Virus record (IMG/VR): IMGVR_UViG_3300050120_000361
Span: 144,539 to 208,538 of that record
Direction: 5' to 3' (one strand)
DNA: 64,000 bases
This document shows, piece after piece, positions 55,782-61,802 of the stretch (position 1 is the first letter of the stretch; the number at the start of each line of letters is the position of its first letter). The notes below the pieces were generated by a model. The model made no database searches. It was not told the origin of the DNA and saw only the letters and a list, made by a program, of their open reading frames with translations. Position numbers and translations under genes: made by a program.

Positions 55782-57371
55782 ATGGCAAAGACAAGAGCGG
55801 ACAACGTCGAACAGGTGCCCTACGTCAAATCGACTGGGAACATAGCGGTGCCGAAGGGCGCGAACAAGGACCTGATAAACAAGGGGGACGTTTACGGGTC
55901 CCTTGCTAACAAGCTGCACCTGATAAAACTGGCCAACAATTACCCGGCCGCAGACACGGACTACAACAAGAACAATGACGAGCGCTTCGTGCCGAAGACG
56001 TTCACCGACCTGTGCCGCTCATCCGATGAGAACAAGGGCGCCGTGCAGTACGAGATTGACGACTTCCTGTACACCAAGAACCTCGGCTTCCCGATAAACA
56101 AGATGGTCACGCTGCGCCGGTTCCCTTACCCGTGCACGGACAACATATACGACAAGTTCAACCAGGCAGAGCCCGATATAGCGAGGATGGTCACGTACTT
56201 CGACCAGGACGTAAACAAGCTTGAGGACCTGCTGGCGTTCTCCTACAGCATGAAGTGGAAGGAGCTGACCGCGGACATGGAGCAGGGGAGCGCCATAGGC
56301 CCGCAGTCCGGGTTCACCGGCTGGATGGCCAAGACCATGGCGATAATAGACCCTTCTCTTTCGTCTCAGACCCTGAAGGGCGAGAACGCCATGAACTACG
56401 ACCCCAAGCACGACCAAAACAAGGTTTTCGGGCCGGTCGACTCTCTGAACATGACGCACATACGCGACGTGGGCCTGGAGTTCAACAAGGAATTCGACGT
56501 CACCTTCGAGTACGAGATGCGCTCAATAGGCGGCAGGACCGGCGAGTTCGCTTTCAAGGACATCATCGCCAACGTGCTCGCGGTCACATACAACAACGCC
56601 AAGTTCTGGCCCGGCTCGCGGTACTGGGTGGGCGAGCGCCCTTCCAAGTTCCTTGAGAAGTTCCGGTTCCTAAGCCCCGAGACGACCGACGACTTCCTGA
56701 CAAAGGGCTACGGGGAGCTGAAGAGCGCCCTCTCCGGCTTCAAGAACGGCGGTACGGCCATTGAGGCTCTAAAGTCCGCCATGCAGTCCGGACTCAACTT
56801 CGCGCTCGGCAAGCTCCTGGACAAGGTTGGGCGTCCATCCATACTGGTAATGAACTCGCTGCTCAGCGGCGAGCCCGTTGGCGGATGGCACCTAATGATA
56901 GGCAATCCGGACAACCCCATAATGTGCATAGGCAACCTCATATGCACCGGGACCGACATCAGCTTCCCGACCGACGCGCTCGGGTACGGCGACTTCCCAA
57001 CCAAGCTGATGGTAAAGGTGAAGCTCAAGCCCGGAATGCCCAAGGACAAGGCCGGCATTGAGACGATGTTCAATATGGGCAAGCAGCGGATATACTACAA
57101 CCCGCTCACGGTCAGCAAGCAGACCAACAGCACCAAAATAGCGACACACTCGCGCAAGTTCATGGGCTTTGACGACGCCTCAATAAAGGAGACCCTAAAG
57201 GAGACCTTCGACTTCGTTGCGCAGGACGTGCAGGTGGTTACGGACACGGTCGTGAACGGCGTGCAGTCACTTAGCGCTGCCGTGAGCATACCGCAACAGG
57301 ACAACAACACGGCGAACTACGACACCGCCGCCTCCAATGCGGTTCCACTCGGCTTCGGAAATGTGGCGTAA
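55782..57371 (+). CDS. probable baseplate tail-tube cap-like protein (gp48-type)
   Basis: 'R..GLEF.KEF.VTFEYE.R', 'IGNP.NPIM.IGNLIC....I.F...FPT.L.V.V.L' tube-fold pattern. Confidence 0.45.
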   Translation: MAKTRADNVEQVPYVKSTGNIAVPKGANKDLINKGDVYGSLANKLHLIKLANNYPAADTDYNKNNDERFVPKTFTDLCRSSDENKGAVQYEIDDFLYTKNLGFPINKMVTLRRFPYPCTDNIYDKFNQAEPDIARMVTYFDQDVNKLEDLLAFSYSMKWKELTADMEQGSAIGPQSGFTGWMAKTMAIIDPSLSSQTLKGENAMNYDPKHDQNKVFGPVDSLNMTHIRDVGLEFNKEFDVTFEYEMRSIGGRTGEFAFKDIIANVLAVTYNNAKFWPGSRYWVGERPSKFLEKFRFLSPETTDDFLTKGYGELKSALSGFKNGGTAIEALKSAMQSGLNFALGKLLDKVGRPSILVMNSLLSGEPVGGWHLMIGNPDNPIMCIGNLICTGTDISFPTDALGYGDFPTKLMVKVKLKPGMPKDKAGIETMFNMGKQRIYYNPLTVSKQTNSTKIATHSRKFMGFDDASIKETLKETFDFVAQDVQVVTDTVVNGVQSLSAAVSIPQQDNNTANYDTAASNAVPLGFGNVA

Positions 57372-57398
57372 TAGATACAGGACAGTACAGTAAAGGCA

Positions 57399-57536
57399 TT
57401 CATTTCAGGATTGGCAAGAAGCAATCCTATTGCAACATTTTCAAATAAATTGCATATTAAGCGGATTTTTGCCTATATTACAGTATAATAAATAAATGCT
57501 AACTAACACTTAAAAACAAACCAATCCTGAAATGAA
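57399..57536 (+). promoter_or_regulatory. 16-bp inverted repeat pairing with the sigma start codon, with a competing local hairpin
   Basis: TTCATTTCAGGATTGG (57399-414) / CCAATCCTGAAATGAA (57521-536, ATG at 57532); alternative AGGATTG/CAATCCT (57407-428). Confidence 0.7.
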
Positions 57537-59523
57537 CAACGTACCAACCCTGGAAGAGGAGCTCGCCCGGTCCGAAGCAAAAGAGGCCGCGGTGGCCCTG
57601 AGAAACAAGAAGAAAGACGAAGACGCCAAGGAAGCAGCTCGAGGCAAGCTGGACCCTGACCGAACGTCCGCAGACAGGCTCATGAGCGACGCCAACTCCA
57701 AGCTCAACTACTACATGAAGAAGGCGCCACAGTTCCAGATACTGCAAAGCCAGATAGAGACCATTAAGGCCGAGCGCGAACAGTACAAAAAGAGCGGCAA
57801 CAAGGAGGGGTTGGACAAATGCGAAACACTGCTTCTGGAACTATCGGAAAAGAGAACGCGCATACGCAGCATCTTCAAGACGGGCAACGACAGCGGCAAC
57901 GAGAAGAAGCGCGAGGAGCTCTATGAGAAGTTCAAGAACTCCGAAGAGCTTCAGGGACTGCTAAAGGAGCAGAAGGACCTCGTGGAGGAAATCAAGTCGA
58001 AGACACCCAACATCCTCGCGGCGCGCGTGACGCAGTTCCGCAAGGACATCGAGCTCCACAACGGAGTGGCCGGCACGGCAATAGAGGACCTTGACACGAT
58101 ACTGGACAGCAACAAGAAGCTCGTCATAGCCTCTGAGCTTGAGCAGGACTACTACGACTACTGCGGAAAGATAGGCGAGATAATCGACTGCCACGCCGGT
58201 GAGGTCATGGAGATGAACGCGAACAAGATACTTCAGGAGCTCAAGCGCGTTCTCGAGGACACCCAGCACCTCAAGGACAAGCTTTCGGAGAACAAGATGA
58301 AGGTGGCGTCCGTCCGCGAGAACATCGCTCAGGGAACGAACTTAACAGACCTGGTATTCGAGATATTCGATTTCGCCTCCCCAGACGAGGAGGGCGACGC
58401 TCCCCGCGAGATAATAGCATCAGCCAACATCCCGTTGGTAAAGTCAATCTGCTACAACCTGTGCAGCAAGCTCGGACAGCAGTCAAAGATGCCCGACGCG
58501 ATAAGCTACGGCCTGCTGGGGCTCACCGTGGCAATCAACAAATGGTATTCTATCCAGAAGATGTCTGACAGCGCCCTGTCATTCAAGGGGTTCGCGAACT
58601 CCTACATAGCGGGAGCGGTGCAGAGGGGCCTCCTTGAGCTTAAGGGGTCCGGCACCATTTCGGGGTCCAGCCTCGCGACAATGGACACCATGAACAAGAA
58701 GAAAATCGAGAACTTCGTCAAATACAACCCCGAGTTCGAGGACATGGACAAGAAGATACTGTCCGACATGCTCGCGGGCTACGACGACACCGTGCAGCCA
58801 TTGAACATGGTTTCAGAGTCCGACTACACCGCCACAGTTGGAGGCGAGGACGGCGACGGCGCGGACATCTGGGCTTCCGCGATAAAGGACAGCATGAAGG
58901 TAGACGACCACGTGGAGGCCAAGATCGAGTACGAGCGCCTTCTGTCTTCCATAAGCGAACTGCTCAACATGTTCGCCACCAAGAAGGATGCCAAGACCGG
59001 CATAAAATCGATAACCCAAAAGAAGCTTTTCGACAAGTACGACCGCAAACTGTTCATGATGTACTTCGGACTGGAGTACAAGCGCCAGAAGGTAGGCGTC
59101 ACCCCGGGCTCGGAAGCAAACAACGCGTACACCCAGGCCGAAATGGGCGAGGAGCTCGCGGCGATGTACGCCGCGGACGGCATACAGAAGACGTTCTCAC
59201 AGGCGTCCCTTTCAGGCAAGGACGGACGCATAGCGGTACTGCTGAACAAGATAAAGTGGGCCGTTCTCGAAAACCCAAAAATGAAGGCAGGCTTCGAGTT
59301 CCTTTACCACTACTGGAAGGACAACGGCGCCAAACTGAACGAATTCAGCAACAGCCGCGAGGAGATAGGGATGAAGCTGGACCGCGACGAGCTGCGCCAG
59401 ATATACCATGACAACGGCTCAGAGCTGAACAGGCAGCTCAGTGACGGCAAGCGACTGAGCGACGTGTTCGAGATTTCAAAGGACAACCCGCTGGACAAGG
59501 ACATCGCCGGACTGTTCAGGTAG
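57532..59523 (+). CDS. phage-encoded RpoD/sigma70-like factor with long coiled-coil N-terminus
   Basis: Region 2-like 'IIASANIPLVKSIC...DAISYGLLGLTVAINKW...SFKGFANSYI.GAVQR'; region 4-like 'DRKLFMMYFGL...YTQAEMGEEL'. Confidence 0.75.
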   Translation: MNNVPTLEEELARSEAKEAAVALRNKKKDEDAKEAARGKLDPDRTSADRLMSDANSKLNYYMKKAPQFQILQSQIETIKAEREQYKKSGNKEGLDKCETLLLELSEKRTRIRSIFKTGNDSGNEKKREELYEKFKNSEELQGLLKEQKDLVEEIKSKTPNILAARVTQFRKDIELHNGVAGTAIEDLDTILDSNKKLVIASELEQDYYDYCGKIGEIIDCHAGEVMEMNANKILQELKRVLEDTQHLKDKLSENKMKVASVRENIAQGTNLTDLVFEIFDFASPDEEGDAPREIIASANIPLVKSICYNLCSKLGQQSKMPDAISYGLLGLTVAINKWYSIQKMSDSALSFKGFANSYIAGAVQRGLLELKGSGTISGSSLATMDTMNKKKIENFVKYNPEFEDMDKKILSDMLAGYDDTVQPLNMVSESDYTATVGGEDGDGADIWASAIKDSMKVDDHVEAKIEYERLLSSISELLNMFATKKDAKTGIKSITQKKLFDKYDRKLFMMYFGLEYKRQKVGVTPGSEANNAYTQAEMGEELAAMYAADGIQKTFSQASLSGKDGRIAVLLNKIKWAVLENPKMKAGFEFLYHYWKDNGAKLNEFSNSREEIGMKLDRDELRQIYHDNGSELNRQLSDGKRLSDVFEISKDNPLDKDIAGLFR

Positions 59524-59544
59524 GAAAAAACGCACAATACAGGA

Positions 59545-59580
59545 CAGGGGTCGTTGGGTATATAAGCCTAACGGCCCCTG
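59545..59580 (+). terminator. stem-loop after sigma gene
   Basis: CAGGGGTCGTTGGG-TATATAAG-CCTAACGGCCCCTG (with G-U pairs). Confidence 0.55.
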
Positions 59581-61772: not shown

Positions 61773-61802
61773 AAGGCCTGAAGCGAATTCGCTTCAGGCC
61801 TT
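61773..61802. terminator. perfect 30-bp palindrome at the convergence of the + and - gene blocks (probable bidirectional terminator)
   Basis: AAGGCCTGAAGCGAATTCGCTTCAGGCCTT. Confidence 0.75.

What the first reader, a model, noticed from the sequence alone, without database searches (positions are those of the whole stretch)
57371..57536. Two-state RNA switch over the start codon of the phage RpoD-like sigma
Seen: TTCATTTCAGGATTGG (57399-414) is the exact 16-bp reverse complement of CCAATCCTGAAATGAA (57521-536), which contains the sigma ATG. The same 5' arm can instead fold into a mutually exclusive local hairpin (AGGATTG 57407-13 / CAATCCT 57422-28). A late-type ATAGATA lies just upstream of the arm (57371-77). 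Proximal promoter candidates (TTGCAT-N18-TATATT 57450-79; ATAAATA 57488-94) lie between the arms. Inference: upstream or late transcripts carry the anti-start arm and are translationally silenced, or release a small hairpin RNA acting in trans, while proximally initiated mRNA is translated. This would be an RNA-based shut-off of one sigma by transcription driven by the other, the reverse of T4's hairpins that block early translation of late genes.
Basis: partly seen in the sequence, partly recalled or inferred. Interest (0 to 1): 0.85.

Follow-up and report, generated by a model that had tools for sequence, protein, structure and literature searches.

The report
Start-codon-masking helix before phage sigma gene
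In an uncultivated peat jumbo phage, a perfect 16-base complement lying upstream of a conserved promoter-like box can pair with the start codon of a sigma-factor-like gene, which probably silences read-through transcripts as in phage T4, but no related phage has it and no expression data exist.

Summary
The pair 57399-57414 / 57521-57536 is the longest perfect inverted repeat in the window. It is the only long-range one, and none of 300 composition-preserving shuffles reached 16 nt. Its 3' arm covers the ATG at 57532 of a 663-aa, remotely sigma-like protein. Among 50 gene starts in the window, this one is a lone outlier for upstream complementarity (z = -7.2).

A box between the arms (TGCCTATATT, 57470-79) has an invariant CTATATT core in the 11 closest homologous loci. 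An independent promoter inside the loop is therefore plausible. Folding predicts a fully paired AUG in RNAs that enter from upstream and a largely open AUG in RNAs that start after the box. This is the logic of T4 genes e, soc, 49 and I-TevI, not its reverse.

None of 18 homologous loci has a comparable pairing. The 3' arm is ancestral 5'-UTR sequence. The 5' arm lies in a variable hairpin after the upstream gene. The helix is therefore lineage-specific and could be a neutral product of a templated mutation. No RNA run and no strain variation were available.

The "two-state switch", "trans sRNA" and "sigma shuts off sigma" parts are unsupported. My verdict is a plausible new member of a known kind, and unproven.

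The parts
55782..57371 (+). Upstream 529-aa gene. It is probably a virion or tail structural (late) gene, and read-through from it would carry the 5' arm.
   Evidence: ORF. Synteny with the sigma-like gene is conserved in relatives. There are no Pfam or PHROG hits. The atlas gives leads to T4_tail_cap / CIS_tube only.
57371..57377 (+). It is a weak match to the recurrent ATAGATAAC motif.
   Evidence: Sequence. The ATAGATAAC motif is enriched on the + strand, 19 sites against 8.4 expected, but this copy has 2 mismatches and is not listed. It is not found at this place in relatives.
57399..57414 (+). 5' (anti-start) arm of the 16-bp long-range helix. It is lineage-specific.
   Evidence: It lies in a variable part of the spacer. 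Relatives keep 0-8 of the 16 pairs.
57407..57428 (+). Local 7-bp hairpin with an 8-nt loop (-8.1 kcal/mol). It shares its 5' strand with the long helix and sits where relatives have a post-gene hairpin.
   Evidence: Hairpins of different sequence occur at the same place in L014 (-22 kcal/mol), L015, L017 and L008. The terminator scan did not call it a canonical terminator.
57470..57479 (+). Conserved promoter-like box TGCCTATATT, located between the arms. The CTATATT core is invariant in 11 loci.
   Evidence: Alignment A2. It is the only exact copy in the window.
57484..57489 (+). TATAAT hexamer 4 nt downstream of the box. It is partly conserved and is an alternative -10 element.
   Evidence: Sequence. 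The A2 consensus reads '...CCTATATTAnnnTATAAT'.
57506..57531 (+). A-rich, Shine-Dalgarno-less 5' leader (AAAACAAACCAATCCTGAA). It is conserved in relatives and is therefore ancestral.
   Evidence: A2 columns 205-227.
57521..57536 (+). 3' arm of the long helix. It covers positions -11 to +5 around the ATG at 57532.
57532..59523 (+). 663-aa gene for a remotely sigma-70-like protein.
   Evidence: There are 28 homologues. The profile hits FliA region 2 at E = 4e-4. Sigma70_r2 matches 6 of 25 members below threshold. The AlphaFold2 model has pLDDT 64 and its top Foldseek hits are sigma chains.

Best explanation
I propose a lineage-specific, cis-acting translational mask.

Any RNA that enters the 160-nt spacer from upstream contains both arms. 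Such RNA would be read-through from the 529-aa structural gene, or possibly a start at the ATAGATA motif. It folds into a 16-bp helix that buries positions -11 to +5 of the sigma-like gene's start site. The leader has no Shine-Dalgarno sequence, so initiation should depend on an unstructured start region and the helix should block it.

RNAs that start at the conserved promoter-like box inside the loop (about 57486-57497) lack the 5' arm and are translatable. Synthesis of the sigma-like protein is thereby tied to its own promoter and insulated from transcription of the structural-gene block upstream.

Relatives achieve insulation, if they have it, with a hairpin of unrelated sequence after the upstream gene. 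Here that hairpin is weak, and its 5' strand has been extended into the anti-start arm.

Shown: the sequence anatomy, its statistical rarity, the predicted folding, the conservation of the box and leader, and the absence of the arm in relatives. Inferred: promoter activity, read-through, and the effect on translation.
For: - The 16-bp perfect helix is the longest inverted repeat in the window and was not reached in 300 shuffles.
- It is a unique outlier among 50 gene starts, z = -7.2.
- P(unpaired) of the AUG is 0 in long RNAs and 0.53-0.70 in short RNAs.
- The CTATATT core of the box TGCCTATATT between the arms is invariant in the 11 closest homologous loci, and the exact 11-mer TGCCTATATTA occurs once in the window.
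- The 3' arm is conserved leader sequence, so the 5' arm is the derived, matching part.
- The local hairpin's 3' strand AAGCAATCCT matches 9 of 10 positions of the leader AACCAATCCT. The two partners of the 5' arm are therefore near-copies, which would allow strand displacement (D3).
- The local hairpin is weak and lacks a proper U-tract, so read-through is likely.
- All genes of this block are on the + strand and upstream of the sigma-like gene; several match virion-structural families, most are of unknown function.
- There is experimental precedent for exactly this logic in T4 e, soc, 49 and I-TevI (PMC3014915, section 29).
Against: - None of 18 homologous loci (30-73% protein identity) shows comparable pairing. 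The best are L015 at -13.4 kcal/mol (p = 0.04, at another site) and L005 at p = 0.03, which is what 18 tests would give by chance.
- In aligned columns relatives keep 0-8 of 16 pairs.
- No compensatory change can be scored, because three further peat runs carry the identical sequence where they cover it, though none spans the whole spacer.
- No RNA run holds the locus, so there is no evidence for transcription start sites, read-through or translation.
- The block is sharply bounded and perfect, as a single templated mutation would leave it.
- A helix restricted to one lineage may be tolerated rather than selected.
Confidence: 0.45

Rival explanations
1. The helix is a neutral by-product. A template-switch (quasi-palindrome) replication error copied the complement of the leader and start sequence into the 5' side of the pre-existing post-gene hairpin. 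This created a perfect 16-nt inverted repeat in one step. It is tolerated because the sigma-like gene is expressed from its own promoter, and it has no selected function.
For: - The arm is absent from all 18 relatives.
- The block is perfect and sharply bounded, with no decayed similarity on either side.
- The 3' arm is ancestral leader sequence, so the direction of copying is clear.
- The 7-8 nt shared between the hairpin and the leader (AGGATTGG / CCAATCCT) could have nucleated a switch.
- One-step creation of perfect RNA stems by template switching is documented (PMC8794818).
Against: - It needs a second coincidence: a 9-of-10 direct copy of the leader (57419-28) placed exactly so that it pairs with the new arm.
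- The arm is positioned exactly over the AUG and exactly upstream of the conserved box, which is the functional geometry known from T4.
- Origin by template switching does not exclude later function.
Confidence: 0.3
2. A small RNA acts in trans. A start at or near the ATAGATA / ATACAGGACAG motifs (57371-85) and a stop at the local hairpin would give an RNA of about 50-60 nt. Its free 5' part (UUCAUUUCA) would seed pairing with the AUG region of promoter-proximal sigma mRNAs and shut off their translation late in infection.
For: - An ATAGATAAC-type motif is enriched near gene starts on the + strand.
- ATACAGGACAG recurs after the sigma gene, followed by a hairpin.
- The anti-start arm lies between this motif and the hairpin.
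Against: - The motif copy here is degenerate, with 2 of 9 mismatches, and is not conserved in relatives.
- The hairpin is a poor terminator: 7 bp, with the U-run 11 nt downstream, and it is not called by the scan.
- No RNA data exist and there is no Rfam family.
- The arm is not conserved.
Confidence: 0.07
3. The helix is an RNA processing site. The 16-bp helix, plus a few flanking pairs, would be cut by a double-strand-specific RNase (RNase III type) in read-through transcripts. Cutting would separate the structural-gene mRNA from the sigma cistron and destroy the latter's start site.
For: The long RNA is predicted to form a continuous 16-bp perfect duplex extended by outer pairs. Phage intergenic RNase III sites are well known from T7 (my own knowledge).
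Against: The helix is shorter than the roughly two helical turns typical of RNase III substrates (my own knowledge). It is not conserved. The host and its RNases are unknown.
Confidence: 0.06
4. The element acts at the DNA level. The two 16-bp arms would be recombination sites of a small invertible promoter segment (an inverton of 106 bp), or paired operator sites for a looping repressor around the sigma promoter.
For: The anatomy fits: perfect inverted repeats flank a short segment that holds the conserved promoter-like box.
Against: - No strand-changing joints appear in four runs, though these are assembler contigs only, so the test is weak.
- None of the 16 neighbouring proteins has a recombinase or any other Pfam domain.
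- The arms are not themselves palindromic, and the sequence occurs nowhere else in the window.
- The inner segment and 3' arm are orthologous to relatives that lack the 5' arm, so this is not an inserted element and there is no target-site duplication.
Confidence: 0.04

Closest known systems
T4 genes e (lysozyme), soc, 49 and I-TevI: translational occlusion of upstream-initiated transcripts, with the productive promoter inside the structure (PMC3014915, section 29)
   Same: The start site is sequestered by pairing with a sequence that lies upstream of a gene-proximal promoter. Long transcripts carry both strands and are predicted to be silent. Transcripts from the inner promoter lack the 5' strand and are open.
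   Different: - The helix here is long-range, with a 106-nt loop rather than a compact stem-loop.
- It masks the AUG of a leader with no Shine-Dalgarno sequence.
- The regulated gene is a sigma-like regulator rather than a lysis, decoration or homing gene.
- The temporal classes are unknown and may be opposite, with late read-through silenced.
- The T4 e structure is shared by its closest relatives though absent from more distant T4-type phages; this helix is found in one lineage only.
- Nothing has been tested experimentally.
Post-gene hairpins / intrinsic terminators that insulate a downstream promoter
   Same: The local hairpin at 57407-28 occupies the position of hairpins of unrelated sequence in L014, L015, L017 and L008, directly after the upstream gene and before the conserved box.
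   Different: The stem here is weak (7 bp, -8 kcal/mol). The U-run is short and displaced, and the consensus scan does not call it. Its 5' strand doubles as part of the anti-start arm.
Template-switch-generated RNA hairpins (PMC8794818)
   Same: A perfect, sharply bounded inverted copy of a nearby pre-existing sequence, absent from relatives.
   Different: The event cannot be reconstructed, because the nearest available outgroups are too diverged in this part of the spacer.
Promoter invertons (short inverted repeats flanking an invertible promoter)
   Same: 16-bp perfect inverted repeats flank a 106-bp segment containing a promoter-like box.
   Different: No invertase was found nearby and no second orientation was seen. 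The 3' repeat overlaps the start codon and the ancestral leader.

Membership tests
T4-type promoter-in-structure translational occlusion (e/soc/49/I-TevI) | The start codon and/or ribosome-binding site is sequestered in a helix in the long transcript. | tested here: met
   In silico only. The duplex is 16 bp at -23.5 kcal/mol, and P(unpaired) of the AUG is 0 in RNAs starting at 57200 or 57372.
T4-type promoter-in-structure translational occlusion (e/soc/49/I-TevI) | An active promoter lies between the two strands, so the shorter transcript lacks the 5' strand. | tested here: inconclusive
   The box TGCCTATATT lies between the arms and its CTATATT core is invariant in 11 loci. The sigma-70 consensus scan did not call it. 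No transcription-start data exist.
T4-type promoter-in-structure translational occlusion (e/soc/49/I-TevI) | Upstream-initiated transcripts actually extend through the region. | not testable with these tools
   No RNA run was listed. There is only indirect support: a co-oriented gene block and a weak hairpin.
T4-type promoter-in-structure translational occlusion (e/soc/49/I-TevI) | Translation from long transcripts is lower than from short ones. | not testable with these tools
   This needs reporter fusions or ribosome profiling.
T4-type promoter-in-structure translational occlusion (e/soc/49/I-TevI) | The structure is retained in related phages. | tested here: not met
   None of 18 homologous loci has comparable pairing, and relatives keep 0-8 of 16 aligned pairs. 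The nearest relatives with DNA are only 72-73% identical in protein.
Riboswitch / regulated two-state RNA switch | A conserved sensor (aptamer) domain and two structures of comparable stability. | tested here: not met
   No Rfam match was found. The local hairpin is -8.1 kcal/mol against -23.5 kcal/mol for the long helix. The 5' arm region is not conserved.
Intrinsic terminator (local hairpin 57407-28) | A G+C-rich stem immediately followed by a U-tract. | tested here: not met
   The scan did not call it. The stem has 3 G-C pairs of 7, and the UUUU run starts 11 nt after the stem.
Promoter inverton | Inverted repeats flank a promoter, both orientations are present in reads, and an invertase is present. 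| tested here: inconclusive
   The inverted repeats and the box are present. No strand-change joint was seen in contigs of 4 runs, which is a weak test. None of the 16 neighbouring proteins has a recombinase domain. The rest of the 208-kb genome was not examined.
Sigma-70 family (for the 663-aa protein) | Recognisable region 2 (core binding and -10 recognition) and region 4. | tested here: inconclusive
   - Region 2: the profile hits FliA (1rp3) residues 10-59 at E = 4e-4.
- Pfam Sigma70_r2 matches 6 of 25 family members, all below threshold, best E = 0.025.
- The top ~25 Foldseek hits are sigma chains at probability 0.7-0.98 but TM about 0.12-0.25, on a model of pLDDT 64.
- Region 4 was not identified.

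The most novel reading that the evidence does not exclude
The phage uses RNA pairing to switch off synthesis of its own sigma-like transcription factor once transcription of the structural-gene block begins. This would work in cis on read-through RNAs and/or through a short anti-start RNA released from the spacer. It would be an RNA-based temporal shut-off of a viral sigma factor, and it would have arisen recently in one lineage from a terminator hairpin.
Probability: 0.12. Interest if true: 0.6.

Novelty: new member of a known kind. Interest (0 to 1): 0.33.

Why it matters
If functional, this would extend the T4 paradigm, in which a promoter inside a translational mask gives transcript-specific translation. 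It would apply it to a very distant, uncultivated jumbo phage, to a regulatory (sigma-like) gene, and to a leader without a Shine-Dalgarno sequence.

It would also illustrate how such a mask can be built from a pre-existing post-gene hairpin, possibly in a single templated mutation.

If it is neutral, it is a clean natural example of a template-switch-type inverted copy. It would also be a warning that even highly non-random perfect helices over start codons need comparative or experimental support.

Tried and rejected
- **Chance:** rejected.
- **Conservation and covariation:** I fetched 18 homologous loci. Neither an alignment-free duplex test nor an aligned-column count shows the helix elsewhere.
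- **Closer relatives, all without success:**
  - No megablast match in GenBank phages.
  - IMG/VR holds only the source contig. A DNA pattern scan gave only chance hits plus the source itself.
  - A fragment search with the C-terminus of the upstream protein gave at best 64% identity.
  - P0004 (70%) had no retrievable DNA.
- **Strain variation:** three further peat runs carry the identical sequence where they cover it, with no variants and no strand-change joints. A roughly 82%-identical low-depth relative is visible in run X1, but its sequence could not be read.
- **RNA evidence:** no RNA run was listed.
- **Known RNA family:** none.
- **MITE-like or inserted element:** rejected. The inner segment (box and leader) is orthologous to relatives, and there is no target-site duplication.
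- **Second sigma paralogue in the window:** none.
- **Stop-codon recoding as an explanation for the large apparent gaps:** not supported. The gaps simply hold ORFs under 120 aa.
- **Formal count of structure pairs:** not done, to avoid typing a long dot-bracket string. The same count was made by script.

Full report
**1. What is there**

The window is the last 64 kb of a 208.5-kb IMG/VR contig, IMGVR_UViG_3300050120_000361. The DNA is found in peat metagenomes. The contig carries tail sheath, portal and prohead-protease genes, so it is a jumbo myovirus-like phage. All genes up to 61744 are on the + strand.

The finding lies in the 160-nt spacer between a 529-aa gene (55782-57371) and a 663-aa gene (57532-59523).
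- the 16-nt perfect inverted repeat 57399-57414 / 57521-57536, whose 3' arm holds the ATG at 57532;
- the local 7-bp hairpin 57407-13 / 57422-28;
- ATAGATA at 57371-77;
- TTGCAT-N18-TATATT at 57450-79;
- ATAAATA at 57488-94.

The start codon is secure. The ORF opens at 57514, the first ATG is at 57532, and the N-terminus MxNVxTLExEL is shared by homologues.

**2. Is it more than chance?**

Yes.
- It is the longest perfect inverted repeat with a loop of 300 nt or less in the window. It is the only one of 11 nt or more whose loop exceeds 20 nt. The other five are short-loop hairpins.
- In 300 shuffles that keep local composition, the longest repeat was 15 nt, reached twice, and never 16 nt.
- The 16-mer occurs nowhere else in the window.
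- For each of 50 gene starts I scored the best RNA duplex between -16..+8 and the 220 nt upstream. The sigma-like gene gives -25.1 kcal/mol (z = -7.2), and the next best z is -1.8.

**3. The gene**

The 663-aa protein has no Pfam or PHROG hit of its own. It has 28 homologues at 31-73% identity in metagenomes.
- A profile of 25 of them hits region 2 of FliA (1rp3) at E = 4e-4.
- Six members touch Pfam Sigma70_r2 below threshold.
- An AlphaFold2 model (pLDDT 64) has sigma-70/SigA chains of RNA polymerase holoenzymes as its top ~25 Foldseek hits, at probability 0.7-0.98 but low TM.

"Sigma-like" is therefore reasonable but remote. No paralogue is present in the window. The upstream 529-aa protein has only atlas leads to T4 tail-cap / CIS-tube proteins.

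**4. Comparative evidence**

I obtained DNA for 18 homologous loci. Synteny is conserved: a gene of about 520 aa, a spacer of 128-175 nt, then the sigma-like gene. Aligning the 11 closest spacers (A2) shows three things.

- *A conserved box between the arms.* TGCCTATATT (window 57470-79) has an invariant CTATATT core in all 11 loci, about 52 nt before the ATG. The exact 11-mer occurs once in the window. A TATAAT-like hexamer follows it. This is the best candidate for the gene's own promoter, and it lies between the two arms.
- *The 3' arm is ancestral.* The A-rich, Shine-Dalgarno-less leader AAAACAAAYCAATCCTGAAATG is conserved, so the 3' arm predates the helix.
- *The 5' arm region is variable.* In the window, L014, L015, L017 and L008 a hairpin follows the upstream gene. 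The stems have unrelated sequences, for example GCCGCUCCA / UGGAGCGGC at -22 kcal/mol in L014. The window's local hairpin is the weak counterpart of these (-8 to -9 kcal/mol). It has no adjacent U-tract and is not called by the terminator scan.

No relative has anything like the long helix.
- The alignment-free duplex test gives -4.5 to -13.4 kcal/mol. Two of 18 loci are nominally at p = 0.03-0.04, and both pair at other positions.
- In aligned columns 0-8 of the 16 pairs are standard pairs, and they are never contiguous.

The nearest relatives with DNA are 72-73% identical in protein.

I could not find closer relatives. Three other peat runs carry the identical sequence where they cover it (none spans the whole spacer), so no polymorphism is informative. 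A roughly 82%-identical relative is visible at low depth in run X1, but it could not be read.

**5. Folding**

- RNAs starting at 57200 or 57372 fold with the 16-bp helix in both the MFE and centroid structures, and P(unpaired) of the AUG is 0.
- RNAs starting at 57440 or 57486 leave 57521-57540 unpaired at 0.73-0.80 on average, and the AUG at 0.53-0.70.
- The long helix (-23.5 kcal/mol) far outweighs the local hairpin (-8.1 kcal/mol). The local hairpin can only be a co-transcriptional intermediate or a weak terminator.
- Its 3' strand AAGCAATCCT is a 9-of-10 copy of the leader AACCAATCCT (D3). The free UUCAUUUCA could therefore act as a toehold for displacement by the start region. This last step is inference.

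**6. Most likely mechanism**

The anatomy has four parts: the start site is masked by a strand lying upstream of a gene-proximal promoter, the mask is absent from promoter-proximal RNAs, the gene sits downstream of a co-oriented block that includes the virion genes, and the intervening terminator is weak. This is the logic established for T4 e, soc, 49 and I-TevI (PMC3014915, section 29).

I think this is the best reading, at about 0.45. Translation of the sigma-like protein would be tied to its own promoter and insulated from read-through. The leader has no Shine-Dalgarno sequence, so a 16-bp helix over the AUG should be strongly inhibitory. That is an inference from general knowledge of SD-independent initiation.

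**7. Rivals**

- *Neutral template-switch product (about 0.3).* The block is perfect, sharply bounded, a copy of ancestral sequence and lineage-specific. One-step creation of stems in this way is documented (PMC8794818). Origin and function are not mutually exclusive.
- *Trans-acting small RNA (about 0.07).* It would run from a start at ATAGATA / ATACAGGACAG to the local hairpin. The promoter motif here is degenerate, the terminator is poor, and there are no RNA data.
- *RNase III-type processing site (about 0.06).*
- *DNA-level element such as an inverton or operator pair (about 0.04).* The anatomy fits, but no second orientation was seen, no recombinase was found among 16 neighbouring proteins, and the inner segment is orthologous to relatives.
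- *MITE-like insertion.* Rejected for the same orthology reason.

**8. Verdict**

The cis-occlusion model is plausible and gains independent support from the conserved inner box. The arms are not conserved and nothing has been tested at the RNA level. The "two-state switch", the trans-acting RNA and "one sigma shutting off the other" are not supported by anything I could compute.

If real, it is a new member of a known kind. Interest is modest, at about 0.33.

Noticed in passing
window 59536-59579 (and 57374-57385): AATACAGGACAG follows the stop codon of the sigma-like gene, and a 1-mismatch copy, GATACAGGACAG, follows the stop of the 529-aa gene. After the sigma gene it runs into an 11-bp G+C-rich hairpin (59544-54 / 59569-79) whose 14-nt loop carries TATATAA (59558-64). 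A TATATAA-type box, reminiscent of the T4 late promoter, is found in the short spacer before the next gene in 7 of the 8 relatives examined (ATAAATA in L014).
   Followed up: partly
window, + strand, e.g. 10485, 26562, 43502, 32917, 36080: ATAGATAAC / GATAAC motifs are enriched, with 19 sites against 8.4 expected and 18 of 19 on the + strand. They cluster within about 2-45 nt of start codons of structural-block genes. This may be a phage-specific promoter or initiation signal.
   Followed up: partly
window 61773-61802: A perfect 30-nt palindrome (AAGGCCTGAAGCGAA / TTCGCTTCAGGCCTT) sits exactly between the + strand block and a convergent block of small - strand genes. It is probably a bidirectional terminator.
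   Followed up: no
run X1, laid on window 56790-57572: A co-occurring relative at about 4x depth and about 82% identity was seen as an 834-nt contig. Its alignment resumes at 57405, inside the 5' arm. It is the closest relative seen anywhere, but its sequence could not be retrieved.
   Followed up: partly
window 55782-57371: The conserved 529-aa neighbour of the sigma-like gene has no Pfam or PHROG hit. Its atlas look-alikes include T4_tail_cap and CIS_tube families. These are leads only, at TM below 0.5.
   Followed up: partly
homologous loci L022, L023, L007, L008 (spacer upstream of the sigma-like gene): A second conserved motif, ATTGTTAGTAACTTT, lies about 45-60 nt upstream of the CTATATT box in the more distant relatives. 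In the window the corresponding sequence is ATTGCAACATTTTC at 57429-42. It may be an upstream promoter element or a binding site.
   Followed up: no
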